IMG/VR virus record: IMGVR_UViG_3300042541_001760
Coordinates: 1-64,000 of that record
DNA length: 64,000 nt
Strand: one strand, 5' to 3'
The notes below the pieces were generated by a model. It was not told the origin of the DNA. It made no database searches and saw only the letters and a program-made list of their open reading frames with translations. Each line of letters opens with the position of its first letter. Positions within the stretch are counted from its first letter, which is position 1. The position numbers and the translations under genes were made by a program. Below are positions 19,775 to 36,072 of this stretch, in pieces.

Positions 19775-19811
19775 TTTACTTAAAATAAAAAAAAGTTAAT
19801 ATTATATTGTT

Positions 19812-20603: not shown

Positions 20604-20659
20604 AAAATTATAATTTAGAATTATATAACGAATCAAATTATAAATTTAGTAAAATATGA
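20600..20659 (+). other. 19-codon mini-ORF coupled at both ends (gene remnant or translational coupler)
   Basis: MKNYNLELYNESNYKFSKI; ATGA overlap with both neighbouring genes. Confidence 0.5.
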
Positions 20660-21672: not shown

Positions 21673-21895
21673 TTACTATAAAAATAGAGAATTTGGGGAA
21701 TTAAAATTATCAATCAATGATTCATTTATGTGTGATGAATTTTATTCCTAAGCGGGTCAAGACATTTTTGTTATTAGCGTACTCAATGGAAAAAAAGAAG
21801 GTGTTTTTTTGGATATAGGAGCCTCAGATCCACAAATAATAAATAATACTTTTTTACTGGAAAAGAAATTTGGGTGGAAAGGGGTTCGTTTTTAA
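21662..21895 (+). pseudogene. 5' fragment of an FkbM-type methyltransferase with an internal stop
   Basis: ...DEFYS*AGQDIFVISVLNGKKEGVFLDIGASDPQIINNTFLLEKKFGWKG; TAA at 21749-21751 replaces the Gln (CAA) of the YSQxGQD motif. Confidence 0.8.
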
Positions 21896-22047
21896 ATAAA
21901 AATAAATATAAAAAAATATTTGTTCCCAGTATTTGGTTCGGACCAAGCGGTGAAAAAAATTACCAAGACATCTACGAAGATGTATGGATAAAAATAAATG
22001 TAAAATATGAAAATGGAAAACTTATTCACAAAAACATCAATATCTGA
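21883..22047 (+). pseudogene. Orphan 3' fragment of a GT11 gene
   Basis: GSFLNKNKYKKIFVPSIWFGP...WIKINVKYENG parallels the C-terminus of 18959..19774 (GGFLNKNTNKKVMVPSIWFGP...WTKINVFYENG). Confidence 0.8.
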
Positions 22048-22783: not shown

Positions 22784-22786
22784 CAT

Positions 22787-23596
22787 ATGTTAAAATTAAA
22801 TATGATAAGCAGGATTTTTGAACATAACGGTTCATCGACCGTCAATAGGGTACCAAAAAACTTTATATGGGACTTTAATGGGGTTGACGGATTAGTTGAT
22901 TTCTATATTGATGGTGATGTTCATTTAGGTTTAAAAAATAAAAATGATGGTAGGATAAAGATTTTATGGACATTAGAATCACCATATTTTAATAATAACG
23001 TTTTTGACTTTATTAAGGATAATTTAACAACTATAATAGATACTTTTGATTTAATTTTTACATACGACGATGATTTATTAAAATTAAACGATAAGTTTTG
23101 TTTTTTACCTGTTGGGGGTTCTTGGATAGTAAGTCCATCGATAAGAAAAAAAACAAAGACGGTATCAATGATAACATCTAATAAACGACTCACTCCACAA
23201 CAAAATGAAAGGGTTTTATTTGCTAATAATAATAAAAACAATATTGACGTATATGGTAGAGGGTTTAATGAAATAATCAATAAAGAAGAGGGTTTAGATG
23301 ACTACATGTTTTCTATATGTATAGAAAACGCAACCCATAATACTTACTTTACGGAAAAAATTTTAGATTGTTTTTTGACAGGTACAATCCCCGTCTATAA
23401 AGGGACTAAAAACATTACAAATTTTTTTGACACTGATGGAATTTTATTTTTAGATAAAATAGAAATCAAAGACTTAACACATAATTTATATCAATCAAAA
23501 ATAAAAAGTATTGAGGATAATTTCATTCGCGCAACTGAATTTATGTTACCTGAAGATATTATATATAATAAATTAAAAGAAAAAAAAATAATATAA
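22787..23596 (+). CDS. GT10 alpha-1,3/4-fucosyltransferase-like
   Basis: YMFSICIEN...YFTEKILDCFLTGTIPVYKG donor-binding motif; WTLESP. Confidence 0.75.
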   Translation: MLKLNMISRIFEHNGSSTVNRVPKNFIWDFNGVDGLVDFYIDGDVHLGLKNKNDGRIKILWTLESPYFNNNVFDFIKDNLTTIIDTFDLIFTYDDDLLKLNDKFCFLPVGGSWIVSPSIRKKTKTVSMITSNKRLTPQQNERVLFANNNKNNIDVYGRGFNEIINKEEGLDDYMFSICIENATHNTYFTEKILDCFLTGTIPVYKGTKNITNFFDTDGILFLDKIEIKDLTHNLYQSKIKSIEDNFIRATEFMLPEDIIYNKLKEKKII

Positions 23597-23652
23597 TAAA
23601 AATTATTTAATCACTAAAGATTGAATACATAACAATACAAAAAATTTGAATA

Positions 23653-24336
23653 ATGGATTTTACTTTTGGTATAATTACTGGCGGGGATAATGATAAGATG
23701 ATTAATGAGATAATTGACTCAATTGAGAATGAAAATATTCCAAATTATGAAATTATTATCGTAGGTAATTCAAATTTAGTAAGGAAAAATACTAAAGTGA
23801 TAAATTTTGATGAGACTATAAAAGTAGGATGGATTACAAAAAAGAAAAATATCATAACTAAAGAGTCTAATTTTGAAAATATTGTTTTTCTTCATGATTA
23901 TATAAAATTAAATGAGGGTTGGTACAACGGTTATTTGGAGAGTGGTAACGATTTTGCGATTAGAATGGATAAAATTATAAACCACAACGGTGAAAGATTT
24001 AGAGATTGGTGTATATGGCCACATAACAACAATGAAATGGATTCTTTTATAGGTAGGGATTGTTTAATCCCTTATACTATAAAACATTTAAGTAAGTATA
24101 TGTATATCTCAGGATCCTATTGGGTTGCCAAAAAATATGTTATGATGGAATTCCCGTTAAATGAAAATTTAACGTGGGGACAAGGAGAAGATGTTTTATG
24201 GTCCAAACAAGTTAGAGAAAAATATGAATTTAATATGAACACCAATTCTAGTGTTTTTATAATTAAAGGAGTTAAAGATAGGGTTTTTAATGAACCGGAT
24301 GAAAATAAAATAGAAGCACTAAAAAGTATAAATTAA
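23653..24336 (+). CDS. GT-A (GT2-like) glycosyltransferase
   Basis: FTFGIIT, YEIIIVG, WITKKKN, VFLHDY and GEDV. Confidence 0.65.
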   Translation: MDFTFGIITGGDNDKMINEIIDSIENENIPNYEIIIVGNSNLVRKNTKVINFDETIKVGWITKKKNIITKESNFENIVFLHDYIKLNEGWYNGYLESGNDFAIRMDKIINHNGERFRDWCIWPHNNNEMDSFIGRDCLIPYTIKHLSKYMYISGSYWVAKKYVMMEFPLNENLTWGQGEDVLWSKQVREKYEFNMNTNSSVFIIKGVKDRVFNEPDENKIEALKSIN

Positions 24337-24337: not shown

Positions 24338-25711
24338 ATGATTAAATTAATAATATTCGATTTGGATGGGGTTTTAGTTGATGCCAAAGAAATCCATTAT
24401 GAGTCATTAAATAAAGCGTTAAAACAAATCGATGAAAAATTTGTAATAACTAGAGAAGAACATCTAACAAAATATGACGGGCTGACCACTAAAACAAAAT
24501 TGAAATTATTAAGTGATAATAAAAACTTACCGGAATCAAGTCATAGTAAAATATGGGAATTAAAACAATCATTGACATTTGATGTAATTAAAGAACAATT
24601 AACGGAGGATGTTCGTTTAAAAAAAATACTAAAGTCCCTTAAAGACGATGGATTTAAGATTTATGTGGCGTCGAATTCAATTCGAGAAACGATTAAATTG
24701 ATGTTATATAAAACAGGATTAATTGAGTATGTTGATTATTATTTAGCCAACGAAGACGTTAATAATACTAAACCACATCCAGAAATTTATTTAAAGTGTA
24801 TGGTACATGCTGGTGTAAAACCTAACGAAACTTTAATAGTTGAAGATAGTTTTCATGGTAGGCAGGCGGCGATAGAATCTGGAGGTTATTTATGTCCTGT
24901 CGAAACACCAAAAGATGTTACCTATAACAAAATATACAATCAAATTACAAACATAGATAATGTGCCAACATCAAACAAAAAATGGGAATCGGAAGATTTT
25001 AATATTTTAATACCCATGGCGGGTGCGGGTTCTAGATTTAGTTCTGCCGGCTACACATTTCCAAAACCATTAATAGAAGTTAATCATAAACCAATGATTC
25101 AAGTTGTGGTTGAGAATCTAAACATTAAATCTAAATTCATTTATATTGTTCAAAAAGAACACTATGAAAAATATAACTTAAAATTTTTATTAAATTTAAT
25201 AACACCTAATTGTGAAATAGTACAAGTTGAGGGGGTTACTGAAGGTGCTGCATGCACCACTCTTTTGGCTAAGGAATATATTAACACCGATAAACATTTA
25301 ATCATCGCTAATTCAGATCAATTTGTGGAGTGGGATAGTAATAGTTTTTATTATTCGATGACAAACGATAAAGTAGATGGAGGTATGTTAACGTTTAAAG
25401 CAACACACCCTAAATGGTCTTTCGCTAAATTAGATAGTAATGGTTATATTATTGAGATTGCCGAGAAAAAACCAATCAGTGACCTTGCGACAGTTGGGGT
25501 TTATTATTGGAACAAAGGTTCAGATTATGTTAAATACGCTGAACAAATGATTGAAAAAAATGTTAGAGTTAATAATGAATTTTATGTTGCTCCGGTTTAC
25601 AACGAAGCGATTTTAGATGGTTTAAAATTTAAACCATATAACATTAATAAAATGTGGGGTTTAGGAACGCCAGAAGACTTAAAAACATACTTAGAAAATA
25701 AAATAAAATAA
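24338..25711 (+). CDS. HAD phosphatase fused to sugar-phosphate nucleotidyltransferase
   Basis: IFDLDGVL...KPHPE...VEDS followed by IPMAGAGSRF...FPKPLI...LGTPEDL. Confidence 0.85.
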   Translation: MIKLIIFDLDGVLVDAKEIHYESLNKALKQIDEKFVITREEHLTKYDGLTTKTKLKLLSDNKNLPESSHSKIWELKQSLTFDVIKEQLTEDVRLKKILKSLKDDGFKIYVASNSIRETIKLMLYKTGLIEYVDYYLANEDVNNTKPHPEIYLKCMVHAGVKPNETLIVEDSFHGRQAAIESGGYLCPVETPKDVTYNKIYNQITNIDNVPTSNKKWESEDFNILIPMAGAGSRFSSAGYTFPKPLIEVNHKPMIQVVVENLNIKSKFIYIVQKEHYEKYNLKFLLNLITPNCEIVQVEGVTEGAACTTLLAKEYINTDKHLIIANSDQFVEWDSNSFYYSMTNDKVDGGMLTFKATHPKWSFAKLDSNGYIIEIAEKKPISDLATVGVYYWNKGSDYVKYAEQMIEKNVRVNNEFYVAPVYNEAILDGLKFKPYNINKMWGLGTPEDLKTYLENKIK

Positions 25712-25716
25712 ACACT

Positions 25717-26523
25717 ATGGATCATAATTACAAATTAACACCTTTTAAATTCAGAGAAATAACAAAAAGTTTACCGTGCAATGAAATATACATAAAAAAT
25801 GTTGACGAAGCTAAATTTTTAACTGGACAACCTTTAAATAAATTTTGGACTTTTGATTTTATAGAAACGATTTCAGAATATATTGATTTTAATGAAATCA
25901 AAACAATATTAGACTTAGGAAGTAGAGACGGTTATCAAAGTGTAGAATTTAGAACATGGTTTCCAGATGCTAAAATTATTCTTTTTGAAGCAAATCCAAA
26001 TCAGTTAGACCAAATTAATAGTGTTACTTATGGTCATAATATTGAAATTGTTATGTCATCGGTAGGAAATTTTAATGGTAAAACTAGTTTTTATATTTCA
26101 CCTAGTAACGTAGGGGCTTCATCGTTATTAAAAATTAATAATCACAAAAGAAGTTCTGAATGGCATCAACACGAAATTAATGTTGATATAATTAGAGTTG
26201 ATGATTGGGCTAAAGAAAATAACATAAATGAAATTGATATACTGTGGATGGATGTCCAAGGAGCTGAAAAAATGGTGCTAGAAGGTGTCGGCGAATATTT
26301 AAAAAACGTTAAATCTATTTGTACTGAAGTAGAAGTAGAACATATGTATCATGGATCAACATTAAAAACTGAATTAGACGATTTTTTGTTAGAAAATAAT
26401 TTTGTAGAACTACAAGCTTTTCATATGGTGCCTATAGAAAATGTTACATTATCTGAAATAAAAAATTTACAAGGTGAAGTTGATGTTATCTATATAAATA
26501 AAAAGTATTTAAAAAATGATTAA
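25717..26523 (+). CDS. FkbM-family methyltransferase
   Basis: LDLGSRDG, FEANP and IDILWMDVQGAE. Confidence 0.8.
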   Translation: MDHNYKLTPFKFREITKSLPCNEIYIKNVDEAKFLTGQPLNKFWTFDFIETISEYIDFNEIKTILDLGSRDGYQSVEFRTWFPDAKIILFEANPNQLDQINSVTYGHNIEIVMSSVGNFNGKTSFYISPSNVGASSLLKINNHKRSSEWHQHEINVDIIRVDDWAKENNINEIDILWMDVQGAEKMVLEGVGEYLKNVKSICTEVEVEHMYHGSTLKTELDDFLLENNFVELQAFHMVPIENVTLSEIKNLQGEVDVIYINKKYLKND

Positions 26524-26836
26524 AACAAATTTAAACGATTTTTTTAAAGGTTGGTTTGTTGGTAATTTTGATCCAACCTTAAACAACACTGAAGATTTTG
26601 AAGTTGCAGTTAAAAGATACAATGCGGGTAATTATGAAGAAAAACACCACCATAAAATATCAACAGAAATAACAGTAATTATCGAAGGAGAGGTTGAAAT
26701 GAATGGAACCAAATACATCAAAGATGATATAATTACGATACAACCAAATGAATCCACTGATTTTAAATGCATAACTGATGTTGTTACAGTTGTTGTTAAA
26801 ACACCATCAGCAAATAATGATAAATATATAAATTAA
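26516..26836 (+). CDS. Cupin-domain protein
   Basis: GWFVGNFDP, HHHKISTEITVIIEG and VVVKTPS. Confidence 0.75.
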   Translation: MIKTNLNDFFKGWFVGNFDPTLNNTEDFEVAVKRYNAGNYEEKHHHKISTEITVIIEGEVEMNGTKYIKDDIITIQPNESTDFKCITDVVTVVVKTPSANNDKYIN

Positions 26837-26839
26837 ACT

Positions 26840-27490
26840 ATGAAATTATTAACAGAAATAGCTAATAAATATGGTACAGATAAAGGAACTACTTTTTACC
26901 CATCACATGGATTTAGTGAAATTTACGATGATTTCTTTATTAATAAAAGAAATGATGTTCTAAAAGTCTTAGAAATAGGTATAGATAAAGGTAACTCATT
27001 AAGAATGTGGAGGGATTATTTTCCTAATGCCATAATATATGGATTAGATGTTCAAACACATCAATTTTTTACTGAAGAAAGGATAATCACTTCATATGCA
27101 AATCAATCAGATATACATGATTTAAATAATTTTATTGATGAATATGGAGGTGATTTTGATATCATCATCGATGATGGCGGCCATGACATAATCTTCCAAC
27201 AATTCACGTTAGGGGTATTGTTTAAATATTTAAAACCAAACGGAGTTTATATTGTAGAAGATTTACATACTTCTTTTTTAGAAGACTGGTTAAAAGATAA
27301 AGACTTGGAAGTAACATATGAATATACTGCATATAATACACTCAAAAATTTTGAAATTAATAAAGAATTAATTACCCCTCATATTGAGTTAGAAAATGTT
27401 GAATACATCAATAGAAATACTAAATCAATAAATATTTACGATATTAATGGGGATAATCAACACATAACCAGTATTTTATATAAAAAATAA
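26840..27490 (+). CDS. Class I SAM-dependent methyltransferase (sugar O-methyltransferase-like)
   Basis: YGTDKG, VLEIGI...SLRMWRDYFP, IIIDDGGH and GVYIVEDL. Confidence 0.8.
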   Translation: MKLLTEIANKYGTDKGTTFYPSHGFSEIYDDFFINKRNDVLKVLEIGIDKGNSLRMWRDYFPNAIIYGLDVQTHQFFTEERIITSYANQSDIHDLNNFIDEYGGDFDIIIDDGGHDIIFQQFTLGVLFKYLKPNGVYIVEDLHTSFLEDWLKDKDLEVTYEYTAYNTLKNFEINKELITPHIELENVEYINRNTKSINIYDINGDNQHITSILYKK

Positions 27491-28185
27491 TGTTTGTCAT
27501 ATGTTGTAAATATAATCCACAGTTCCCTAACATTATTGAATTAGTTGATGGTATTAGAAGATATCACCCCACAGAAAAAATTGTGGTCGTTGACAGTAAT
27601 TCTAGTGATAAAACATATTTTAATCTATTAAAAAAATATGATGTGATTATTGAAGATATTAGTAATGAAAATTGGATGATAGGGGCGTATTGGTATACAT
27701 ATAAAAAATACCCAAATGAGGAATTCTATTATTTTATGCATGACTCTATGAAGGTAAAATCAAACTTAACTTATTTAAAAGAAAATGATTTGACTATCCT
27801 AATGCATTTTGAAAGATTCAATGTAGCGCATTTTAATAATTGGGAATCTTTGGTTAATGAGAATACAAAATATAAATATAATAAAAATGGTTATGGTTGT
27901 TTCGGACCTATTTTTTTCTGTAAAAATAAAGTCATGAAGAATATGTTAGATGCGGGTGTTGATAAATTATTACCAAAAAATAAGTTCGAAACACAAATTT
28001 GTGAAGGTGCCTATGGTTTCTTTTTAGAAAATCAGGGTTATGATTTAACTAAATGCTCGTTATTCGGTAATGTTTTTGAGGTAGAAGGGCCTAATGGAAA
28101 ATCTGGACTACCACCACATAAAACAGATTGGCAATTTCCGGTTGAGAAATTTTACGCATCACATGTTGATGCAAAAAGATTATAA
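27490..28185 (+). CDS. Putative glycosyltransferase-like protein
   Basis: IVVVDSNS and YFMHDS resemble GT-A motifs; glycan-island context. Confidence 0.5.
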   Translation: MFVICCKYNPQFPNIIELVDGIRRYHPTEKIVVVDSNSSDKTYFNLLKKYDVIIEDISNENWMIGAYWYTYKKYPNEEFYYFMHDSMKVKSNLTYLKENDLTILMHFERFNVAHFNNWESLVNENTKYKYNKNGYGCFGPIFFCKNKVMKNMLDAGVDKLLPKNKFETQICEGAYGFFLENQGYDLTKCSLFGNVFEVEGPNGKSGLPPHKTDWQFPVEKFYASHVDAKRL

Positions 28186-28202
28186 TTAATAAAAATAAAA
28201 TT

Positions 28203-28562
28203 ATGAATAGACCAAAAACAATTTTTTTAGATATTGACGGAACACTTATAGAGCATTCTGAAAACATTGTAGAACAATTTACTAAAACACCTAAATTATT
28301 AAAAGGAACGTTAGAAAAATTATCTGAATGGGATAGAAAAGGACACAATATAATTTTAACAACTGGAAGACGTGAAGGTGTTAGAGATATTACAATTAAA
28401 CAATTATCGGAATTAGGTATTTTCTATGACCAATTAATTATGGGGATAGGTGGTGGAATAAGAGTTGTTGTAAATGATAGGAAAAAAGATAAAGAATATG
28501 ATACCGCAATAGCAATAAACCTCAAAAGAAATGAGGGTATAGGAACAATAAATGATTTATAA
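28203..28562 (+). CDS. Capless HAD-family phosphatase
   Basis: IFLDIDGTL, ILTTGR and VVVNDR. Confidence 0.75.
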   Translation: MNRPKTIFLDIDGTLIEHSENIVEQFTKTPKLLKGTLEKLSEWDRKGHNIILTTGRREGVRDITIKQLSELGIFYDQLIMGIGGGIRVVVNDRKKDKEYDTAIAINLKRNEGIGTINDL

Positions 28563-28563
28563 T

Positions 28564-28917
28564 ATGAAAAAAGAAGTTACGAAAGTTGATAAACCGTGGG
28601 GTTGGGAAAAATGGATTGAAGTTAATGAAAATTATGTTGTTAAAGAATTATTCATGACTGCCGGTAATAGTTGCAGCTTACAATATCATGAGAAAAAACA
28701 TGAATCTTTTTACGTTTTAAAGGGGCAATTAAAATTTGAAATTGGACCAGATAAAGACAATCTAAGTGAAATGATATTAAATGAAGGTGAATATTATACA
28801 ATAGAACCTTTTGTTGTACATAGAATGTCAGCAATTGTTGACAGTTTGTATTTAGAAAGTTCTACTAATTTCTTAGATGACGTTATTAGATTAGAAGATA
28901 AATATGGCAGAGTATAA
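28564..28917 (+). CDS. Cupin (mannose-6-phosphate isomerase type II C-terminal-like)
   Basis: KPWGWE, SLQYHEKKHE and VHRM; second Met preferred as start. Confidence 0.75.
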   Translation: MKKEVTKVDKPWGWEKWIEVNENYVVKELFMTAGNSCSLQYHEKKHESFYVLKGQLKFEIGPDKDNLSEMILNEGEYYTIEPFVVHRMSAIVDSLYLESSTNFLDDVIRLEDKYGRV

Positions 28918-29695
28918 AAATATTGCCATACTATTATGTGGGCATATAAGAAATTATGATGTTTTAGATTTATGTATTAAAAAACTAAATGAAAATTTAA
29001 TATCTAAAAACGAAAAAGTAAATTTTAAAATATTTTTTTGTTCTTGGGATTATTTAGATTGGCAACATGATGGAACTATTTATTCTTCAGAAAAAATAGA
29101 TGGTGAATTATTAAAAAAATATGGGTTTGATGGTTATAAAATATTAAAACAAAACGAATACCTATCATTTAATGATAGGATTCACTCACAATATCAAGTT
29201 ATTTTTGAATGCAATAAAGTTAAAAAAGAATATGAAACTAAAAGTAACATTATTTTTGACGGTGTGATAAGAACAAGATGTGATTTAATTATAGATTCAA
29301 TAATTAATATCGAAGAAATTAATTTAAATACATATACAATAACTGAAGATGAATTTGGTTTTGCTGATTGGTTTTGTGTTTCTAATAGTACAAATATGGA
29401 CTATTATAGTTTTTTGCACAAAGAATATTATAACCTTACTAAACAAATAAATACAAATGGTTGTTTTAAAAATTTTGATGTTGACCCACATAATATTTTA
29501 TTAATTCATTTACTAAACAATAAATTTGGCTTATCAAAAGAAAAAATATTAGAATTAAAAATAACAGAGAATATCGATGAGTATATAGATAATAATTTAA
29601 CACTTATTGATTCGTATTATATTGATTATTATTTAAAAAGAGTTGATAATCGAGTAAATGCAACATTTAAAAAAATTAAAAATGGAGACATATAA
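28904..29695 (+). CDS. Putative glycosyltransferase-like protein
   Basis: IAILLCGHIR, VIRTRCDL and FADWF; island context. Confidence 0.5.
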   Translation: MAEYKNIAILLCGHIRNYDVLDLCIKKLNENLISKNEKVNFKIFFCSWDYLDWQHDGTIYSSEKIDGELLKKYGFDGYKILKQNEYLSFNDRIHSQYQVIFECNKVKKEYETKSNIIFDGVIRTRCDLIIDSIINIEEINLNTYTITEDEFGFADWFCVSNSTNMDYYSFLHKEYYNLTKQINTNGCFKNFDVDPHNILLIHLLNNKFGLSKEKILELKITENIDEYIDNNLTLIDSYYIDYYLKRVDNRVNATFKKIKNGDI

Positions 29696-31232
29696 AGTTT
29701 TAATAACCACTAGTGGGATTGGTTCTAGATTAGGTGATTTAACAAAATATACAAATAAATGTTTAGTAAGGGTTGGTAAAAAACCGGCTATTTCATACAT
29801 TGTGGAATCCTACCCAAAAGAAATAGAAATAGTAATAACAATTGGTCATTTCGGTTCACAAATTAAAGACTTCATAACCTTAGCATATCCTGAAAGGAAT
29901 TTTACCTTTATTGAAATCGATAAATTTGAAGGTGAAGGATCCTCATTAGGTTATTCGATGATAAAAGCCAAAGAAGAATTGCAATGTCCTTTTATTTTTC
30001 ACGCTGCAGATACGATTATAACTGAAGATATAAAAGAACCAACCGAAAACTGGTTAGCTTGTCAGTACAAAGAAAACAACTCTCAATATCGAACAATTTC
30101 TTTTGTACCTAACAGAATGATAAATGAAAAAGGTGATTTAGAGTCTAATTTCGCTTATATTGGATTGGCAGGTATAAATGATTATAAAAACTTTTGGGGT
30201 GCGTTAGAAGAAGAATATAAGAATAATATCAACGATACAACATTAAGCGATTGTCATGCAATTAATAAAATGAATTGTAAATGGAATGTTGTTGAATATC
30301 ATAAGTGGTTAGATATTGGAAATGTTTCTGAATTAAAATACGCTAGAGAAACTATTTATGATAAATTTGATATACTAAATAAAGTTGACGAATCAATATT
30401 TCTATTCAACGACTTTGTAATTAAATTTTCTTACAATAAAACAGTTTGTACTAATAGAGTTCAGCGATGCAAAGAATTATATGGATTAACACCAAAACTT
30501 ATAGACTATACAGATAATTTTTATAAATACGAATATGCTAATGGCGATTTATTATCAACATCAGTTGATGAAGTAATCTTTGAAAATTTTTTAGATTGGA
30601 GTAAAAATAATCTATGGGTTAAACATGGTAAATCGGATGACTTCAAATTAATTACTAAAAAGTTTTATTTTGATAAAACATTTGAACGATTACAAAAATT
30701 ATTTAATGACAATAAAATAAATGATGAATCGATTTCCATCAACGGTATGTTTGTCCCGCCGGTTATGGATATGATAAAAGAAATAGACGAAAACTGGTTA
30801 TGTTCAGACACTTATTATCAATTTCACGGCGATTATATTTTAGACAATATAATTTACAAAGGTAAAGATGATTTTGTGTTGTTAGATTGGAGACAAGATT
30901 TTGGCGGAGATTTAAAAAATGGTGATATCTATTATGATTTAGCTAAATTAAACCACAATTTACTATTTAATCACGATATCGTTCATCAAAATTTATTTTC
31001 AGTAAAGAGAACTTCAAACACCATTAAATGTGATATTTTAAGGAGTGACAATTTGACTAACTGTAGAGAGAAGTTGCATACATGGATAGTTGATAACGGA
31101 TTAGATTTAAAAAAGGTTCAAACATTGACTGCAATCATATGGTTAAACATGTCACCATTACATGATTACAAGATGGGTGAATTTTTATATTATTTTGGAC
31201 GACTTAATCTTTACAAAATGCTATATAAATAA
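29682..31232 (+). CDS. Nucleotidyltransferase fused to an APH/choline-kinase-like kinase
   Basis: VLITTSGIGSRLG...NKCL, WLDIG; C-terminal FHGDYILDN...LLDW...DLAKL. Start at METYK preferred over 29658. Confidence 0.8.
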   Translation: METYKVLITTSGIGSRLGDLTKYTNKCLVRVGKKPAISYIVESYPKEIEIVITIGHFGSQIKDFITLAYPERNFTFIEIDKFEGEGSSLGYSMIKAKEELQCPFIFHAADTIITEDIKEPTENWLACQYKENNSQYRTISFVPNRMINEKGDLESNFAYIGLAGINDYKNFWGALEEEYKNNINDTTLSDCHAINKMNCKWNVVEYHKWLDIGNVSELKYARETIYDKFDILNKVDESIFLFNDFVIKFSYNKTVCTNRVQRCKELYGLTPKLIDYTDNFYKYEYANGDLLSTSVDEVIFENFLDWSKNNLWVKHGKSDDFKLITKKFYFDKTFERLQKLFNDNKINDESISINGMFVPPVMDMIKEIDENWLCSDTYYQFHGDYILDNIIYKGKDDFVLLDWRQDFGGDLKNGDIYYDLAKLNHNLLFNHDIVHQNLFSVKRTSNTIKCDILRSDNLTNCREKLHTWIVDNGLDLKKVQTLTAIIWLNMSPLHDYKMGEFLYYFGRLNLYKMLYK

Positions 31233-31244
31233 TATATTTGGCGT

Positions 31245-32243
31245 ATGAAACCAAAAATATTTATAGGTCCTATGAGTAAAAATATCGTAGATGCGATAAT
31301 TAAATACTCAAACGAAAATGATATTGAAATTGGGTTAATACCGTCTAGAAGACAAGTTGAATTTGACGGTGGTTATGTTAACAATTGGACAACAAAAGAT
31401 TTTTGCGAATACGTAAGAAACCGATCTAATAAAATATTATTAGTAAGAGATCATGCTGGGCCATCACAAGGATATAGTGAGGATGACGGTATGGATTCTT
31501 TTATTGAAGATTGTAAATATTTCGATATCATACATGTTGATGTTTGGAAAAAACATAAAGAGTATCGAGAAGGGTTATTATCTACAGTAGATTTTATTCT
31601 AAAAGGATTCAGTTTAAACTCAAACTTGTTATTTGAAGTGGGTACTGAAGAATCAATCAGACCAACTAACGAAATCGAATTAAATAACCTTTTAGGAGAC
31701 TTGAGAAAGTTATTACCGTTACAGGTATACGGCCAAATTAAATACGCAGTCATTCAATCTGGAACGGCCTTAAAAGGCAACACAAACATTGGTAGTTTCA
31801 ATCAATACAGATTAATCGAAATGGTTAAAGTTGTCAAAAATCACGGGATGATATCTAAAGAACACAATGGTGATTATTTGACAAATGAATTAGTTAAATC
31901 AAAATTTGAAAACGGTTTGAGCGGTATTAATATTGCGCCAGAATTTGGTCAGATAGAAACAAAAATTATTTTAGGGATTATTAAAACTAACCATCCAGAA
32001 TTGATAGATGAATTTTATAAAATTTGCTATGATTCAAAAAGATGGGTAAAATGGGTTGACGCAGATTTTATTCCGGAAAACAACAAAGAAGAAATTATAA
32101 ACATAAGCGGACATTATGTTTTTTCTGAACCTAAGTTTATCGAACTTAAAAATAAATTAAATTATAATAATTTAGATTCTGATGTACAACAATCAATCTA
32201 TAACAGAATCGATGAATTAATTAAAACTATAAATGAAATCTAG
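31245..32243 (+). CDS. GatZ/KbaZ-like (tagatose-6-phosphate 4-epimerase family) protein
   Basis: SRRQVEFDGGYV...T.KDF...ILLVRDHAGP, EVGTE, KEHNGDY and NIAPEFG. Confidence 0.65.
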   Translation: MKPKIFIGPMSKNIVDAIIKYSNENDIEIGLIPSRRQVEFDGGYVNNWTTKDFCEYVRNRSNKILLVRDHAGPSQGYSEDDGMDSFIEDCKYFDIIHVDVWKKHKEYREGLLSTVDFILKGFSLNSNLLFEVGTEESIRPTNEIELNNLLGDLRKLLPLQVYGQIKYAVIQSGTALKGNTNIGSFNQYRLIEMVKVVKNHGMISKEHNGDYLTNELVKSKFENGLSGINIAPEFGQIETKIILGIIKTNHPELIDEFYKICYDSKRWVKWVDADFIPENNKEEIINISGHYVFSEPKFIELKNKLNYNNLDSDVQQSIYNRIDELIKTINEI

Positions 32244-33024
32244 AACTGCGTTTATAATATTTGCTCATTCAACAATACACACAATTGAAGATGTTGATGA
32301 TATGATATCTAATATTTCTTATTTCCACGATAATTGTGATTTTATGATTAATCATCCTACTTTAGACCATCCTAAAATTAGAATGCGTCATATGCCTGGC
32401 AACTTAAATCACTCTAATTTAATTTTTGGTGGTTTGATTGATTTGATTAAAAATATTACCGAAGACGAAATAAACTCATTTGACCATTTTTGTTTGGTTT
32501 CAGCTAACCAATATTTTATAAACGGAATTAACTTTGAAAAAGGGATTAACTATGTTCAATTTTTTAACACTGAAGATTGGTATTCCACATATAATGGAAA
32601 AGATTCAGATATATCGATAGTAGGGTTTCCATTGCAACAACCATATGGTCGTTGGGATGGTAAAAACTTATATTTAGAATACAACGTAGACTTGCCAATG
32701 GGCGCTAATTGGGAATGTATGACTGTAACAAAAGAAGTAATATTATTGGCTAAACAACATTTAGATAAATGCTTAGAGTACTACCCAAATGATGATATGA
32801 TGTCTATATTTTTACCTTATATGGTTTTATTAAGTAAACAGACATGGGAATTCCCTTCTCATTTTGGTACTTATGACCCATCAAACAAACCTAATTATAA
32901 TCGGATAATAACAATAAATCAAATTGTTGAAAAATACAATCAAGGTTACTTTTCAATTAAAAGAGTTAATTATCTTAAAAGTTGTGAATTAAAACAATTC
33001 ATTAGACAAAATTACATGAAATGA
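32233..33024 (+). CDS. Hypothetical protein, possibly GT14/core-2-like
   Basis: TAFIIFAH and HFCLVSANQYF; weak resemblance only. Confidence 0.45.
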   Translation: MKSRTAFIIFAHSTIHTIEDVDDMISNISYFHDNCDFMINHPTLDHPKIRMRHMPGNLNHSNLIFGGLIDLIKNITEDEINSFDHFCLVSANQYFINGINFEKGINYVQFFNTEDWYSTYNGKDSDISIVGFPLQQPYGRWDGKNLYLEYNVDLPMGANWECMTVTKEVILLAKQHLDKCLEYYPNDDMMSIFLPYMVLLSKQTWEFPSHFGTYDPSNKPNYNRIITINQIVEKYNQGYFSIKRVNYLKSCELKQFIRQNYMK

Positions 33025-33983
33025 AAACAATAACAATAAATTATTTATCACATAATAGATTAGATTATTCTAATTTAATGTTTTATTTTTTATCTAAAAT
33101 AAAATTAGAAAATAAAATAAAATTAAAACTTAACGTATTAGCAACTCATGAAAATAATTGGGATAATAAATGTAAAACATTAGGTATTGATTATGAGATA
33201 CATATTATAAATACATATCATAATTATTTAGATAAAATAAGAATTGCTATTTCGAGCAACACTGAATATTCAGTTAAATTAGATGAAGACTGTTTTACTA
33301 ATAACCACGTTTGGGATTATTTAATTGAAAATGTTGTTGAATTACAAAATAATGATGTTCTTACATTATCACCAGTAATGTCAAACAATATACCATCATG
33401 CGATTATTTTATTGAAGATTTCATAAGTGATGACTTAGTTAAAAATAATGTATATAATAATTTTTTAAATAGACCGATGCCAAATGGGTTATGGAGTGTT
33501 GATTATACCCCATTAAATAAATTCACAATTGATGCAACAGAATGGGACGCTAATAAATTTTATGAAGGGTTAAACTTTTTAAACACAAACACAAAAGGAA
33601 TACACCCACTTAGAATTTCATATGAGGCTCAAATAGAAATTAATAATTATATTTTAAACAATATTGATAAATTTATTTCTAATAATGAATTTAAATTATT
33701 TGAAATAAATTCACCGTATTTTACTAATAGTTTATTTTTTATTAAAACTTCTGAATGGGTTAATATATTATCACAACCAACAATTGATGCGTATGATGAA
33801 ATAGCATTAAATAAATACAAAAGGGATAACAATAAAAAGTTTTTATTTGTTAAAAATGGATTTGGTATCCACCCTATGTTTAATACCGTATTCGGTAATA
33901 ACAACCCTTGGGGTATTGGTATTGTGAATGGTGAACAATTAGAGCAAAATTTTTATACTGACTTAAAAAATAAAATAATATGA
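33021..33983 (+). CDS. Putative GT-A glycosyltransferase
   Basis: YSVKLDEDCF (DxD-like) after a YLDKI helix. Confidence 0.5.
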   Translation: MKTITINYLSHNRLDYSNLMFYFLSKIKLENKIKLKLNVLATHENNWDNKCKTLGIDYEIHIINTYHNYLDKIRIAISSNTEYSVKLDEDCFTNNHVWDYLIENVVELQNNDVLTLSPVMSNNIPSCDYFIEDFISDDLVKNNVYNNFLNRPMPNGLWSVDYTPLNKFTIDATEWDANKFYEGLNFLNTNTKGIHPLRISYEAQIEINNYILNNIDKFISNNEFKLFEINSPYFTNSLFFIKTSEWVNILSQPTIDAYDEIALNKYKRDNNKKFLFVKNGFGIHPMFNTVFGNNNPWGIGIVNGEQLEQNFYTDLKNKII

Positions 33984-34618
33984 TACATTGTGTAGGAGAT
34001 AGTCACTCATCGGTGTTTAGTGGCAATGAAGAAATGCAACCCATTTGGCCGGAACGATCAAATGATATAACACCATTTTTTAAAAGTTATCGAATAGGAC
34101 CAGCAACTGCTTACCAATTAGATAATAAAAAAGAAATAATCAACCAAATAATACCGTTAGTAACGGAAGGTGATAAATTATTATTTTGTTTTGGGGAGGT
34201 AGATATAAGAGCACATTTATTAAATCAATCAATTGGTCAAAACCGACCGATTGAAGACGTTGTTATTGAATGCTTAACCCGTTATGTGGAAGTCATTAAA
34301 CATTACAAAAATTTAGGAATTTCAGTCATTGTTTGGGGACCTATTGCGTCTTGGAACGATAGTAAGCCGTATTTAGGTGGTCCTAGTTTTGGTACGAACA
34401 TTGAACGTAATGAAATTACAAGGCTTTTTAACAACCATTTATTATCACAGGTAAAAGTTTACAATATACCATTCGTCACCATATTTCATGATATGTTAAA
34501 TGGTGACGGTACAACTAATGTTGAGTTACTTGATAATTGGCAAGATTGTCATATTCATTTAAATCAAAAGGCCATGCCATTAATAATTAATAGATTTAAA
34601 AATGAAGGGTTAATATGA
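33980..34618 (+). CDS. SGNH/GDSL-like hydrolase or acyltransferase
   Basis: GDSHS, FGEVDIR and DCHIHLN. Confidence 0.65.
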   Translation: MIHCVGDSHSSVFSGNEEMQPIWPERSNDITPFFKSYRIGPATAYQLDNKKEIINQIIPLVTEGDKLLFCFGEVDIRAHLLNQSIGQNRPIEDVVIECLTRYVEVIKHYKNLGISVIVWGPIASWNDSKPYLGGPSFGTNIERNEITRLFNNHLLSQVKVYNIPFVTIFHDMLNGDGTTNVELLDNWQDCHIHLNQKAMPLIINRFKNEGLI

Positions 34619-35055
34619 TATTAATATCCCATAGAGGTAACACTAATGGTAGGGCGGAATCATTAGAAAATAACCCATCATATGTTGATTTAGCTATTTA
34701 TAATGGGTATGATGTTGAAGTGGATGTTTGGTATCTTGAGGGGGTTTTATATTTAGGACATGATAAACCACAATATGTTACCGATATAAAATGGTTTAGT
34801 GATAGGTTGACTAAACTATGGATTCATTGTAAAAATATCGATTCAGTAAAGTACTTTAAAGAGAGTGGATATGAATTCAATTATTTTTGGCATCAGAGAG
34901 ATGACATAACTCTCACCTCTAAAAACTTTTTATGGACGTTTCCCGGTAAAAAACTAACGACCCTGTCAATTGCGGTATTACCTGAAACTGTGGACTCATG
35001 GGATATGACAGAATGTTTAGGTGTATGTTCGGATTACATTAAAAATTATATATAA
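34615..35055 (+). CDS. Short GDPD-like phosphodiesterase
   Basis: ISHRGN, VEVDVW, LGHD, WIHCKN and GVCSD. Confidence 0.7.
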   Translation: MILISHRGNTNGRAESLENNPSYVDLAIYNGYDVEVDVWYLEGVLYLGHDKPQYVTDIKWFSDRLTKLWIHCKNIDSVKYFKESGYEFNYFWHQRDDITLTSKNFLWTFPGKKLTTLSIAVLPETVDSWDMTECLGVCSDYIKNYI

Positions 35056-35119: not shown

Positions 35120-35173
35120 ATGACATATGAAGAATTAACTAAAGTAATAAAAATAGTAAATAAAAATAAGTGA
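35120..35173 (+). other. 17-codon mini-ORF overlapping the GTG start of fcl
   Basis: MTYEELTKVIKIVNKNK with a GTGA overlap; a second 13-codon ORF lies at 35058-35099. Confidence 0.4.
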
Positions 35174-36072
35174 GAAAATTATTAGTAACGGGGAGTAATG
35201 GGTTAGTTGGGTCATCAATTATTTCTGACATAAAAATAGGTAGACAATACGATTTACGAAATGTTGGAGAATCGGATAAGTTGTTTGAACTACACAATCC
35301 CACCCACGTTATTCATTGTGCGGGTAAAGTAGGTGGTGTTGGTGGAAATATGAACTATAAAGGTGAATACTTTTATGATAACATAATGATTAATACAAAT
35401 GTTATTGAGTCAGCAAGAAAAACAAATGTTAAAAATTTAGTTTGTTTTTTGTCCACATGTGTATTCCCTGATAACGTAAATTACCCCCTAACTGAGGATA
35501 TGATACATTTAGGAGAGCCCCACTTTTCAAACTATCCTTATGCTTACGCTAAAAGAATGGCGGACATACAAATAAGAGCGTATAGGGAACAATATGGTCT
35601 TAACTATACATCAGTTATACCAACTAACATTTACGGACCTAATGATAACTTTTCGTTAGAACACGGTCATGTTATGCCAATGTTAATACATAAGTTATAT
35701 TTAGCACAAAAAAACAATACCGATTTTACGGTGTGGGGATCAGGAAAACCTCTAAGGGAATTTATATTTTCTAAAGATGTTGCTAAACTATCAGAATGGG
35801 CGGTTGAGAATTATAACGAATCTGAACCTATAATATTTAGTCCTTCGCAGGAAATATCTATAATTGATTTAGTTGATTTAATAGTTAAAGAATTTAACTT
35901 TAAAGGTAAGGTTATCTTTGACAATACAAAACCTGACGGTCAATTTAGAAAGCCGTCAGACAATAGTAAACTAAAATCTTATTTACCAGATTTTAAATTT
36001 ACACCAATAGAGGAAGGGATTAAAGAAACTGTTAATTGGTTTTTTAAAAATTATGAAAATGCAAGAAAATAA
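35170..36072 (+). CDS. fcl: GDP-L-fucose synthase
   Basis: GSNGLVG, HCAGKVGG, STCVFP, YAYAKR, PTNIYGPNDNF and WGSGKPLREF. Confidence 0.9.
   Translation: MRKLLVTGSNGLVGSSIISDIKIGRQYDLRNVGESDKLFELHNPTHVIHCAGKVGGVGGNMNYKGEYFYDNIMINTNVIESARKTNVKNLVCFLSTCVFPDNVNYPLTEDMIHLGEPHFSNYPYAYAKRMADIQIRAYREQYGLNYTSVIPTNIYGPNDNFSLEHGHVMPMLIHKLYLAQKNNTDFTVWGSGKPLREFIFSKDVAKLSEWAVENYNESEPIIFSPSQEISIIDLVDLIVKEFNFKGKVIFDNTKPDGQFRKPSDNSKLKSYLPDFKFTPIEEGIKETVNWFFKNYENARK

What the first reader, a model, noticed from the sequence alone, without database searches (positions are those of the whole stretch)
24338..35055. Possible undescribed nucleotide-sugar pathway: GatZ-like epimerase with kinase, phosphatases, cupins and two nucleotidyltransferases
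The set comprises HAD-nucleotidyltransferase (24338), cupin (26516), capless HAD (28203), cupin (28564), nucleotidyltransferase-kinase (29682), GatZ/KbaZ-like protein (31245) and a short GDPD-like enzyme (34615). Together they match the isomerase/kinase/phosphatase/nucleotidyltransferase logic of heptose activation (GmhA/HddA/GmhB/HddC). GatZ-family proteins interconvert fructose-6-P and tagatose-6-P in catabolism, but here one sits in a biosynthetic cluster. Inference: one or two pathways activating a rare ketose or polyol-phosphate donor.
Basis: inference. Interest (0 to 1): 0.6.

Follow-up and report, generated by a model that had tools for sequence, protein, structure and literature searches.

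The report
Phage sugar-nucleotide cassette with GatZ-like enzyme
A 261-kb aquatic jumbo phage carries a conserved four-gene, five-enzyme cassette that most likely turns a central ketose phosphate into an unidentified nucleotide-activated sugar for a phage-encoded glycan. Its back half is related to the recently solved phage UDP-arabinose pathway, and its front half (GatZ-like enzyme plus mannose-6-phosphate-isomerase-like cupin) is not described.

Summary
The core is four genes. They are a capless HAD phosphatase (28203), a PMI-type cupin (28552), a nucleotidyltransferase fused to an APH-like kinase (29658) and a GatZ-fold TIM barrel (31245). In 60 of 63 viral loci all partners lie within 5 kb of the GatZ-like gene. 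The reciprocal count is 58 of 60. Some genomes fuse them as GatZ-NTase-kinase and HAD-cupin. The same set occurs in glycan loci of SAR11, Bdellovibrionota, Planctomycetota, CPR bacteria and archaea. The NTase-kinase and the HAD match the PHROG families that hold RB69 gp52/53 and gp51. These correspond to AfhE and AfhF, which in phage HY126 convert arabinose-5-P to UDP-arabinose through a 1,5-bisphosphate. By analogy, the cassette runs ketose-P to epimeric ketose-P (GatZ-like), then aldose-6-P (cupin), aldose-1,6-bisP (kinase), aldose-1-P (HAD) and NDP-aldose (NTase). The product is unknown. HAD-NTase, the 106-aa cupin and the GDPD-like gene are lineage-specific accessories. Verdict: new variant of a known kind, moderately high interest.

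The parts
28203..28562 (+). Core gene 1: capless HAD phosphatase (119 aa), AfhF/GmhB-like. It is predicted to remove the distal phosphate from an aldose-1,6-bisphosphate.
   Evidence: Pfam Acid_phosphat_B 30 bits and HAD_PNKP. NCBIfam HAD-IIIA and Cof. The profile hits Pnkp1 at 3.5e-10, 1xpj at 0.028 and GmhB at 0.04. It hits phrog_1238 at 1.7e-7, the family that holds RB69 gp51. Found within 5 kb of the GatZ-like gene in 62 of 63 viral loci.
28552..28917 (+). Core gene 2: PMI-type cupin (121 aa; likely start 28564). Predicted ketose-6-P / aldose-6-P isomerase.
   Evidence: PF01050 34.9 bits (cut-off 23.6) and Cupin_2. TIGR01479 GMP_PMI C-terminal region. An SLQYH...E motif is visible in the sequence. 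Fused to the HAD in other genomes, for example L156:6597-7307, L234:13315-14070 and L248:9553-10266.
28904..29695 (+). Inserted ORF of unknown function (263 aa; weak DUF7796 match). Not part of the conserved cassette.
   Evidence: Pfam E 6.6e-4, below cut-off. A homologue is present in only 3 of 80 viral loci.
29658..31232 (+). Core gene 3: bifunctional nucleotidyltransferase (N-terminal) plus APH/choline-kinase-fold kinase (C-terminal). The likely start is 29682. AfhE-like.
   Evidence: AF2 pLDDT 89.4. VIA Z 25.0 to 4ecm and 24.2 to LicC for the N-terminal domain; Z 15.9 to APH(4)-Ia and 14.9 to LicA for the C-terminal domain. Invariant GxGSRL, K34, D118, WLDIG, K256, HGD...N (390-397) and D410. 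phrog_4098 E 4e-12 over residues 13-477, the family of RB69 gp52/53.
31245..32243 (+). Core gene 4: short GatZ/KbaZ-fold class II aldolase-superfamily TIM barrel (332 aa). Predicted ketose-phosphate epimerase, with aldolase as the alternative.
   Evidence: AF2 pLDDT 90.7. Foldseek 3txv 1.6e-14 and 2fiq 2e-12. The profile hits KbaY-type 8q57 at 1e-5 and 3txv at 1.5e-4. Motifs RDH, HxD, GTEE, QSGT, KEHNGDY and NIAPE are shared with PF08013 proteins. 4306 homologues.
24338..25711 (+). Accessory: beta-PGM-like HAD fused to an RmlA-like nucleotidyltransferase. A second, independent sugar-activation enzyme (mutase or phosphatase plus NTase).
   Evidence: A homologue is present in 13 of 80 viral loci.
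25717..28185 (+). Accessory genes: FkbM methyltransferase (25717), 106-aa probable cupin (26516), class I methyltransferase (26840), and an unknown 231-aa protein with a weak GT2-like N-terminus (27490).
   Evidence: The cupin hits phrog_24762, of unknown function.
32233..35055 (+). Accessory genes downstream of the cassette: two unknown proteins (263 and 320 aa), an SGNH/GDSL-like protein (33980) and a short GDPD-like protein (34615).
   Evidence: They co-occur as a block only in the closest relatives, 10-11 of 80 loci.
35170..37045 (+). GDP-L-fucose branch: a GDP-fucose synthase-like SDR (35170, GTG start, intact Rossmann motif) and GDP-mannose 4,6-dehydratase (36053).
   Evidence: GDP_Man_Dehyd E 1.8e-118. 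The N-terminus was read.
14129..24336 (+). Upstream glycan genes: GT1-like, GT2_5/GT4, GT25, two GT11, an SDR, a methyltransferase and GT10. An exonuclease and a dUTPase are interspersed.

Best explanation
The unit is a four-gene, five-activity cassette at 28203-32243. It makes a nucleotide-activated aldose from a central ketose phosphate, for the glycan assembled by the surrounding phage glycosyltransferases.

Proposed order of steps:
1. The GatZ-fold enzyme remodels a ketose phosphate by retro-aldol/aldol chemistry. The most likely reaction is C4 epimerisation of fructose-6-P to tagatose-6-P.
2. The PMI-type cupin isomerises that ketose-6-P to the aldose-6-P.
3. The APH-fold kinase domain phosphorylates C1, giving an aldose-1,6-bisphosphate.
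4. The capless HAD removes the 6-phosphate.
5. The nucleotidyltransferase domain condenses the aldose-1-P with an NTP.

Shown here:
- The folds and the conserved catalytic motifs.
- The near-obligate co-occurrence of the four genes.
- The fusions.
- The profile-level kinship of steps 3-5 with the AfhE/AfhF families.

Inferred:
- The order of steps, taken from AfhE/AfhF and the heptose pathway.
- The substrate of step 1, the stereochemistry, the nucleotide and the acceptor.

If F6P, C4 epimerisation and PMI stereochemistry all hold, the product would be NDP-D-talose. Galactose, altrose, allose or a higher-carbon aldose are not excluded.
For: Folds:
- GatZ-like.
- NTase plus APH-like kinase.
- PMI-type cupin and HAD above the Pfam cut-offs.

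Catalytic residues are invariant across the families.

Co-occurrence:
- 60 of 63 GatZ-anchored viral loci hold all three partners within 5 kb. The count is 0 of 26 for PTS-linked PF08013 loci and 0 of 15 for Flavobacteriaceae stand-alone copies.
- 58 of 60 NTase-kinase-anchored viral loci hold the GatZ-like gene. In four of these it is fused into one 856-871-aa protein, and HAD-cupin is fused into 237-251-aa proteins.

The same set sits in bacterial glycan loci, with GT2, carbamoyltransferase and methyltransferase in a SAR11 SAG, and with DegT and SDRs in Bdellovibrionota.

Precedent and kinship:
- NT_kin matches phrog_4098 (E 4e-12, nearly full length) and phrog_21938. HAD119 matches phrog_1238. 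These families contain RB69 gp52/53 and gp51.
- PMC13326640, citing He et al. 2026, equates those proteins with AfhE (Ara5P 1-kinase plus UDP-Ara pyrophosphorylase) and AfhF (Mg-dependent phosphatase) of phage HY126.
- An EKG...SNFAYIGLAG stretch, seen by eye, resembles the EKP...SN-A-G-Y motif of sugar-1-P nucleotidyltransferases. That resemblance rests on my own knowledge.
Against: - No biochemistry exists for any member of this cassette.
- The GatZ-like protein fails the PF08013 threshold. Its nearest above-threshold relatives, the PTS-linked proteins of Klebsiella and Listeria, are themselves uncharacterised.
- The known tagatose-6-P 4-epimerase activity belongs to the more distant 3txv-type branch. 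That assignment is from my own knowledge and was not verified here.
- Direct similarity to the RB69 proteins is marginal (BLASTP E 0.05-0.1; hhalign probability 10-28%).
- The jackhmmer profiles for the small HAD and cupin may have picked up paralogues in some viral loci.
- A PMI-type isomerase together with the neighbouring Gmd/Fcl genes would equally fit a plain GDP-mannose route.
Confidence: 0.55

Rival explanations
1. GDP-mannose supply line. The cupin is an ordinary phosphomannose isomerase. The kinase plus HAD replace phosphomannomutase (Man-6-P to Man-1,6-bisP to Man-1-P). The NTase is a GDP-mannose pyrophosphorylase that feeds the phage Gmd/Fcl and fucosyltransferases. The GatZ-like protein has an ancillary role.
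For: - The cupin passes PF01050.
- The phage has Gmd, Fcl, GT10 and GT11. It has no PGM/PMM-family mutase, and its only NTase domains are the two in this region.
- Gmd lies within 10 kb of the cassette in 37 of 80 viral loci and GT10 in 34 of 80.
- Monofunctional type II MPIs next to Gmd/Fcl are already reported in cyanophages (PMC9602691).
Against: - This route leaves the most tightly linked partner unexplained. The GatZ-like gene is present in 58 of 60 loci and is physically fused to the NTase-kinase in four.
- More than half of the viral loci have no Gmd within 10 kb.
- In the one SAR11 and one Bdellovibrionota locus annotated with Pfam, no gene for a 330-aa Gmd-type enzyme stands next to the cassette. 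The SAR11 locus shows no GDP_Man_Dehyd hit at all. The SDRs of the Bdellovibrionota locus hit GDP_Man_Dehyd only among several SDR families.
- Phage S-SCSM1, which has MPI plus Gmd/Fcl, gave no NTase-kinase hit by tblastn.
Confidence: 0.15
2. Donor for DNA hypermodification. As in RB69 and HY126, the NDP-sugar is transferred to a modified base of the phage DNA rather than to a glycan.
For: - The activation half is related to AfhE/AfhF, which serve DNA arabinosylation.
- The phage is T4-like.
- An exonuclease, a dUTPase/dCTP-deaminase-like gene and PhoH are interspersed in the cluster.
- A ThyA-family gene exists in the genome.
Against: - The ThyA homologue lies about 135 kb away and scores as a canonical thymidylate synthase (276 bits).
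- The neighbours are GT10, GT11, GT25 and GT2 enzymes, Gmd/Fcl and sugar methyltransferases, which is typical of LPS-like glycans.
- The same cassette sits in cellular polysaccharide loci of SAR11, Bdellovibrionota and others.
Confidence: 0.08
3. CDP-alcohol-type donor (LicA/LicC logic). The kinase phosphorylates a free ketose, polyol or amino alcohol released by the HAD. The LicC-like NTase then makes a CDP-linked phospho-donor that is added as a phosphodiester substituent. The GDPD-like and SGNH proteins would process this substituent.
For: - LicC is the best PDB sequence match of the NTase (3e-7 and 1e-8) and has the highest TM by target (0.81).
- LicA is among the best kinase matches.
- JGI names homologues 'choline kinase'.
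- A GDPD-like gene lies downstream.
Against: - No LicD was found in the genome.
- RmlA, GalU and MurU score as well as LicC structurally.
- The related AfhE acts on an aldose phosphate and makes a UDP-sugar.
- A PMI-type isomerase has no role in this scheme.
- The GDPD-like gene accompanies the cassette in only 11 of 80 loci.
Confidence: 0.07
4. Higher-carbon sugar route (lincomycin LmbR/N/P/K/O-like). The GatZ-fold enzyme acts as a true aldolase and condenses a dihydroxyacetone unit with an aldose phosphate to build a heptulose or octulose phosphate. That product is then isomerised, 1-phosphorylated, dephosphorylated and nucleotidylated.
For: - The protein belongs to the class II aldolase superfamily.
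- The five activities map one-to-one onto transaldolase / isomerase / kinase / phosphatase / NTase of GDP-octose biosynthesis. This mapping is from my own knowledge of Lin et al. 2014 and was not checked here.
Against: - The protein shares the GatZ-type motifs. It has Leu where KbaY-type aldolases place the second Zn-binding His (GTAL against GTAH).
- In a huge-phage contig (L002/L097) the cassette lies directly beside a canonical heptose gene set (SIS, GHMP kinase, cytidylyltransferase-like), which argues against simple redundancy with heptose synthesis.
Confidence: 0.1

Closest known systems
AfhE/AfhF (with arabinose-5-P isomerase) UDP-D-arabinofuranose pathway of T4-like phages HY126, RB69 and DLP3 (He et al., Nat Chem Biol 2026, as cited in PMC13326640)
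   Same: - A bifunctional N-terminal NTase / C-terminal APH-like kinase followed by a ~120-130-aa HAD phosphatase, with a sugar-phosphate isomerase upstream. All are phage-encoded.
- NT_kin and HAD119 hit the same PHROG families as RB69 gp52/53 and gp51.
   Different: - The isomerase is a PMI-type cupin, not a SIS arabinose-5-P isomerase.
- An extra GatZ-fold enzyme is obligatorily linked.
- The context is glycan GTs plus GDP-fucose genes, not a 5-hydroxy-dCMP synthase with DNA arabinosyltransferases.
- Pairwise similarity is marginal.
- The cassette also occurs in cellular genomes.
GDP-D-glycero-alpha-D-manno-heptose pathway (GmhA, HddA, GmhB, HddC)
   Same: The same logic: ketose-P to aldose-P, then 1-phosphorylation, distal dephosphorylation by a capless HAD, then nucleotidylation. 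HddC (6jq8) matches the NTase domain at Z 20.9. GmhB appears among the weak HAD hits.
   Different: The isomerase is a cupin rather than SIS, and the kinase has an APH fold rather than GHMP. There is an added GatZ-like step. A canonical heptose gene set lies directly upstream of the cassette in L002.
GatZ/KbaZ/AgaZ family (PF08013), including the tagatose-6-P 4-epimerase branch and PDB 3txv and 2fiq
   Same: Best structural matches. The RDH, HxD, GTEE, Q-x-GT, KEHNGDY and N-x-AP motifs are shared with PF08013 members.
   Different: - About 90 residues shorter, and below the Pfam cut-off.
- Forms a separate clade with 100% SH-aLRT support.
- No GatY/KbaY partner and no PTS or tagatose operon; it is linked to sugar-nucleotide enzymes instead.
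LicA/LicC CDP-choline pathway (fused LicCA in some bacteria)
   Same: The NTase domain's best sequence match is LicC, and the kinase fold matches LicA.
   Different: No LicD or LicB. The obligate partners are a sugar-phosphate isomerase, a phosphatase and a GatZ-like enzyme.
Monofunctional type II mannose-6-phosphate isomerases of marine cyanophages (S-SCSM1; PMC9602691)
   Same: A small cupin with the PF01050 domain in a phage glycan / GDP-fucose gene cluster.
   Different: Here the cupin is coupled, and sometimes fused, to a HAD phosphatase, and is always accompanied by the NTase-kinase and the GatZ-like gene.

Membership tests
GatZ/KbaZ-like (PF08013) | Score above the Pfam gathering threshold | tested here: not met
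   13.8 bits against a cut-off of 26.7, E 0.022. The Listeria relative L003:7929-9197 passes with 56 bits.
GatZ/KbaZ-like (PF08013) | Class II aldolase-type TIM barrel closest to the solved GatZ structures | tested here: met
   Foldseek 3txv E 1.6e-14 and 2fiq 2e-12, TMq 0.74-0.79, ranked above all FBP aldolases.
GatZ/KbaZ-like (PF08013) | Conserved active-site motifs of the family | tested here: met
   RDH-GP-Q, H-I/V-D, E-x-GTEE, Q-x-GT, KEHNGDY and N-I/V-AP align with PTS-linked PF08013 proteins. Leu replaces the aldolase-type second His.
GatZ/KbaZ-like (PF08013) | Genomic partnership with a GatY/KbaY aldolase or a PTS/tagatose catabolic operon | tested here: not met
   The neighbours are an NTase-kinase, a HAD and a cupin. 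A PTS context is seen only in the distant clade.
GatZ/KbaZ-like (PF08013) | Ketohexose-6-P 4-epimerase activity (or aldolase-subunit activity) | not testable with these tools
   Needs an enzyme assay.
AfhE-type bifunctional sugar-phosphate 1-kinase / NDP-sugar pyrophosphorylase | N-terminal NTase and C-terminal APH-fold kinase in one polypeptide, with catalytic motifs intact | tested here: met
AfhE-type bifunctional sugar-phosphate 1-kinase / NDP-sugar pyrophosphorylase | Sequence homology to characterised or assigned members (RB69 gp52/53) | tested here: met
   Both hit phrog_4098: window protein E 4e-12 over residues 13-477, RB69 proteins E 1e-118 to 1e-169. Both also hit phrog_21938. Direct pairwise and hhalign comparisons are only marginal, so the relationship is remote.
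AfhE-type bifunctional sugar-phosphate 1-kinase / NDP-sugar pyrophosphorylase | Adjacent small HAD phosphatase (AfhF-like) | tested here: met
   28203-28562. phrog_1238 E 1.7e-7, the family of RB69 gp51. 1xpj and GmhB are among the PDB hits. Found in 62 of 63 loci.
AfhE-type bifunctional sugar-phosphate 1-kinase / NDP-sugar pyrophosphorylase | SIS-type arabinose-5-P isomerase, and linkage to a 5-hydroxy-dCMP synthase and DNA arabinosyltransferases | tested here: not met
   No SIS domain is present in the region. The isomerase is a cupin. The only ThyA homologue is ~135 kb away.
GDP-heptose pathway (GmhA/HddA/GmhB/HddC) | SIS isomerase and GHMP kinase | tested here: not met
   Neither domain is present in 24338-35055. 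Both are present as separate genes beside the cassette in L002.
LicA/LicC CDP-choline pathway | LicD-type phosphocholine transferase in the same genome | tested here: not met
   PF04991 was not found in the 261-kb genome, which is 89% complete by CheckV.
Type II phosphomannose isomerase cupin (PF01050) | Score above the Pfam gathering threshold | tested here: met
   34.9 bits against a cut-off of 23.6.
Glycerophosphodiester phosphodiesterase (GDPD) | Recognisable GDPD domain with catalytic His/Glu/Asp motifs | tested here: inconclusive
   No Pfam hit. The profile hits only GDPDs but weakly (E 0.009-0.08), and the HRG, EN, E-x-D and HD motifs align. The protein is about half the length of a GDPD barrel.

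The most novel reading that the evidence does not exclude
The cassette is a previously unknown de novo route to a nucleotide-activated rare aldohexose. An example would be NDP-D-talose made by C4 epimerisation of fructose-6-P, PMI-like isomerisation and AfhE/AfhF-type activation. A GatZ-family enzyme would then be used biosynthetically, and the route would be spread by aquatic phages and shared with SAR11, CPR bacteria, Bdellovibrionota, Planctomycetota and archaea.
Probability: 0.35. Interest if true: 0.75.

Novelty: new variant of a known kind. Interest (0 to 1): 0.62.

Why it matters
The word search returned thousands of matches for both families: 4306 proteins for the GatZ-like query and 3972 for the NTase-kinase query. 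They come from JGI, ENA, Logan and TARA assemblies. None carries a functional annotation beyond 'choline kinase' or 'hypothetical'.

If the product is a new sugar nucleotide, it would add a building block to the glycans of abundant aquatic bacteria and their phages. It would give GatZ-family enzymes a biosynthetic role. It would also show that the AfhE/AfhF activation module, so far tied to DNA arabinosylation, is a general and portable device for making sugar nucleotides without a phosphomutase. It further offers a compact two- to four-gene enzymatic route from fructose-6-P to an activated rare sugar.

Tried and rejected
- Megablast of the region against the phage collection found nothing.
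- The literature searches for GatZ with phage, glycosyltransferase or O-antigen, and for 'tagatose 6-phosphate 4-epimerase', returned nothing relevant.
- I tested whether the Flavobacteriaceae stand-alone GatZ-like gene might be their only FBP aldolase. It is not: a canonical PF01116 gene is present in all four genomes checked. The NTase-kinase was not found in those four genomes with the protein query.
- The Sinorhizobium shofinae locus (L038) looked like a cultured-organism lead. It carries a DegT aminotransferase, a HAD and a DeoR regulator in place of the NTase-kinase, so it is a different system.
- I first labelled the distant clade 'canonical GatZ'. The alignment showed it to be a distinct PTS-linked PF08013 subfamily, found with transaldolase and transketolase in Klebsiella, so the label was corrected.
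- The apparent N-terminal truncation of the GDP-fucose synthase gene was checked and dismissed. The Rossmann motif follows the GTG start.
- Nucleotide specificity and product stereochemistry could not be derived from the sequence.
- No cultured organism with a known glycan structure was found to carry the cassette.

Full report
**Context**

The window is the first 64 kb of a single 261,052-bp virus record, 89% complete by CheckV. It encodes:
- a T4-type major head protein (49603-51441, minus strand);
- a portal (55394-57256);
- a large terminase (57320-59092).

The head protein's nearest relatives are uncultured huge phages, a Microcystis phage and Flavobacterium phages, at about 40-43% identity.

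The finding lies inside a ~27-kb block of plus-strand genes (14129-41321). This block is rich in glycosyltransferases (GT1-like, GT2/GT4, GT25, two GT11, GT10, GT2), sugar methyltransferases, GDP-mannose 4,6-dehydratase and a GDP-fucose-synthase-like SDR. Its G+C is 25-29%, against 31-39% in the flanking structural regions. This is a phage glycan island, not a bacterial capsule locus.

**Observation**

Four assignments are solid:
- 24338 is a beta-phosphoglucomutase-like HAD fused to an RmlA-like nucleotidyltransferase.
- 28203 is a capless HAD.
- 28552 is a PMI-type cupin that passes the PF01050 cut-off.
- 29658 is a nucleotidyltransferase plus an APH/choline-kinase-fold kinase. Pfam is sub-threshold, but the AlphaFold model (pLDDT 89.4) matches RmlA and LicC at Z 24-25 and APH(4)-Ia and LicA at Z 15-16. 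The G-x-G-S-R-L, Lys, Asp, HGD...N and Asp motifs are invariant.

The GatZ call needs nuance. The protein fails the PF08013 threshold (13.8 bits). However, its model (pLDDT 90.7) is closest to the two solved GatZ-family structures (3txv and 2fiq, TMq 0.74-0.79), ahead of class II aldolases. It also shares every conserved motif with above-threshold PF08013 proteins.

Two assignments rest on weak evidence only:
- the 106-aa 'cupin';
- the 146-aa 'GDPD-like' protein, supported by alignment of the HRG / EN / E-x-D / HD motifs to GDPDs at E 0.009.

**The conserved unit**

Homologues of the GatZ-like protein (4306) and of the NTase-kinase (3972) are abundant in JGI, ENA, Logan and TARA assemblies, mostly without annotation.

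Co-occurrence counts:
- I anchored on the GatZ-like gene in IMG/VR contigs with at least 5 kb on both sides. In 60 of 63 loci the NTase-kinase, a small HAD and a PMI-type cupin all lie within 5 kb.
- Anchoring on the NTase-kinase, 58 of 60 loci carry the GatZ-like gene.
- Controls are clean: 0 of 26 PTS-linked PF08013 loci and 0 of 15 Flavobacteriaceae stand-alone loci have any partner.

Three kinds of fusion tie the activities together:
- NTase-kinase, in every locus examined;
- HAD-cupin, 237-251 aa;
- GatZ-NTase-kinase, 856-871 aa. With this form, two genes encode all five activities.

The same set occurs in cellular polysaccharide loci:
- A SAR11 single-cell genome has methyltransferase / GatZ-like / GT2 / cupin / NTase-kinase / PNK3P-type HAD / carbamoyltransferase.
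- A Bdellovibrionota MAG has HAD / GatZ-like / cupin / NTase-kinase among DegT and SDR genes.
- The GatZ-like gene, the cupin and the NTase-kinase also lie together in Legionellales, Saccharibacteria, Gribaldobacteria, Leptolyngbyaceae, Verrucomicrobiota, Planctomycetota and archaeal contigs. Peregrinibacteria and an uncultured delta-proteobacterium show the GatZ-like gene and the NTase-kinase only.

By contrast, the HAD-NTase, the 106-aa cupin and the GDPD-like gene accompany the cassette only in the window's closest relatives, in 8-13 of 80 loci. In the window an unrelated 263-aa ORF (28904) is inserted between the cupin and the NTase-kinase.

**Mechanism**

The decisive lead is a published precedent. 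T4-like phages that arabinosylate 5-hydroxycytosine make UDP-arabinofuranose in four steps:
1. An arabinose-5-P isomerase makes arabinose-5-P.
2. AfhE, an N-terminal pyrophosphorylase fused to a C-terminal kinase, converts Ara5P to Ara-1,5-bisP.
3. AfhF, a HAD phosphatase, gives Ara-1-P.
4. The AfhE N-terminal domain makes UDP-Ara.

RB69 gp55, gp52/53 and gp51 are the counterparts of these enzymes (PMC13326640, citing He et al., Nat Chem Biol 2026).

The RB69 proteins define phrog_4098, phrog_21938 and phrog_1238. The window's NTase-kinase hits phrog_4098 almost end to end (E 4e-12) and phrog_21938 (E 4e-12). Its HAD hits phrog_1238 (E 1.7e-7). Direct pairwise comparison is only marginal, so the relationship is remote but real at profile level.

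I therefore read the back half of the cassette as aldose-6-P to aldose-1,6-bisP to aldose-1-P to NDP-aldose. The front half differs from the arabinose system. It has a PMI-type cupin in place of the SIS isomerase, plus the GatZ-fold enzyme.

GatZ-family and class II aldolase chemistry acts on ketose phosphates by cleaving and re-forming the C3-C4 bond. The simplest scheme is F6P to T6P (GatZ-like), then T6P to an aldohexose-6-P (cupin), then activation. These steps, the substrate and the stereochemistry are inference. With PMI-like stereochemistry the product would be NDP-D-talose.

**Rivals**

- *GDP-mannose supply.* This is the most serious rival. The phage has Gmd, Fcl and fucosyltransferases, but no phosphomannomutase-family gene and no other NTase. 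PMI, kinase, HAD and NTase could make GDP-mannose without a mutase. The scheme fails to explain why the GatZ-like gene is the most faithful partner, and sometimes a fusion partner, of the NTase-kinase.
- *DNA hypermodification.* This is suggested by the AfhE/AfhF kinship. It is disfavoured by the LPS-type GT neighbours, the cellular polysaccharide contexts and the distant, canonical-looking ThyA.
- *LicA/LicC-like CDP-alcohol route.* It fits the best sequence hit (LicC). It lacks LicD and gives the isomerase no role.
- *True aldolase role building a heptulose or octulose.* This follows lincomycin-type logic and remains possible. The protein has the GatZ-type, not the aldolase-type, metal-site pattern.

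**Evolution**

In a maximum-likelihood tree the cassette-type proteins form a clade that is cleanly separated (100% SH-aLRT) from the PTS-linked PF08013 proteins. The longer bacterial and archaeal cassette forms are basal. The short ~330-aa forms make one long-branched clade dominated by viruses.

Stand-alone copies in streamlined marine Flavobacteriaceae sit beside sdhCAB. In the four genomes checked, the NTase-kinase was not found with the protein query. These copies nest inside the viral clade next to a cassette-bearing Flavobacteriaceae contig. This suggests phage-to-host transfer followed by loss of the partners, and it hints at the host range.

**Verdict**

- The system is a new variant of a known kind, namely isomerase / kinase / phosphatase / NTase sugar activation of the AfhE/AfhF and heptose type.
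- The front end is undescribed and the product is unknown.

Noticed in passing
L008:10001-10978 (= L084); also L004-L018, L021, L024, L048: Streamlined marine Flavobacteriaceae genomes (1.8-2.1 Mb) carry a stand-alone copy of the short GatZ-like gene, 46-51% identical to the phage one. In the one locus annotated with Pfam (L008/L084) it lies next to sdhCAB. In four of these genomes a canonical FbaA is present and the NTase-kinase was not found with the protein query. In the tree these copies nest inside the viral clade, which suggests phage-to-host transfer and a new, cassette-independent role.
   Followed up: partly
L234:5133-7703, L236:6975-9545, L240:6996-9572, L248:6948-9563; L234:13315-14070, L248:9553-10266: In some IMG/VR contigs, two of them labelled GVMAG, the five activities are packed into two genes. 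One is a GatZ-NTase-kinase triple fusion (856-871 aa) and the other a HAD-cupin fusion (237-251 aa).
   Followed up: yes
L067/L172 (Klebsiella sp. R390, GatZ-like at L172:7001-8254); L003:7929-9197 (Listeria-derived contig filed as phage): A distinct PF08013 subfamily shares all motifs with the cassette type. It sits in PTS operons, and in Klebsiella it lies next to a transaldolase/FSA gene, a HAD and a transketolase. As far as I know it is uncharacterised. The 'Listeria phage LM 4-11-1 / 4-14-1' records that hold it look like host chromosomal fragments.
   Followed up: partly
L002:2727-4926 (= L097), 598-kb and 281-kb huge-phage contigs: A canonical-looking heptose set (GHMP kinase, SIS isomerase, cytidylyltransferase-like protein, two SDRs) lies directly upstream of the HAD-cupin-NTase/kinase-GatZ cassette. 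These phages appear to encode two parallel sugar-activation routes.
   Followed up: no
L233:1932-9600 and L239:6410-9600: These are the only two NTase-kinase loci without a GatZ-like or cupin gene. L233 has two tandem NTase-kinase plus HAD pairs. They may be AfhE/AfhF-like modules for other sugars.
   Followed up: no
window:2-4498 (-) and 6145-11346 (-): Two very large ORFs (more than 1499 aa and 1733 aa) lie on the minus strand, in a stretch with extreme GC skew (0.59 at 8001-10000) and many nested plus-strand ORFs. They are probably repetitive structural or fibre proteins and were not examined.
   Followed up: no
window:18000-34000: The glycan island is markedly AT-richer (G+C 25-29%) than the structural module (33-37%). 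This is consistent with a horizontally exchanged island.
   Followed up: no
G000:C1:168518-169705 (-): A ThyA-family gene lies in a 404-aa open frame. Its Pfam match is split in two pieces, which suggests an insertion. Whether it is a plain thymidylate synthase or a base-modifying homologue was not determined.
   Followed up: no
Hits H22-H29: Synechococcus phage S-SRM01 195687-197141; Enterococcus phages 9183, TJE4 and Planchet; Bacillus phage G gp309: Cultured phages carry distant (21-25% identical) full-length NTase-kinase homologues, variously annotated as NDP-sugar synthase or glycosyltransferase. They may be further AfhE-type sugar-activation enzymes.
   Followed up: no
L001:11008-11352; P0023, P0032 and other ~436-aa homologues: Many GatZ-like homologues carry a C-terminal SnoaL_2 (NTF2-like) domain or are followed by a separate SnoaL_2 gene. 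The window's copy lacks it. Its role, for example as a mutarotase or isomerase, is unknown.
   Followed up: no
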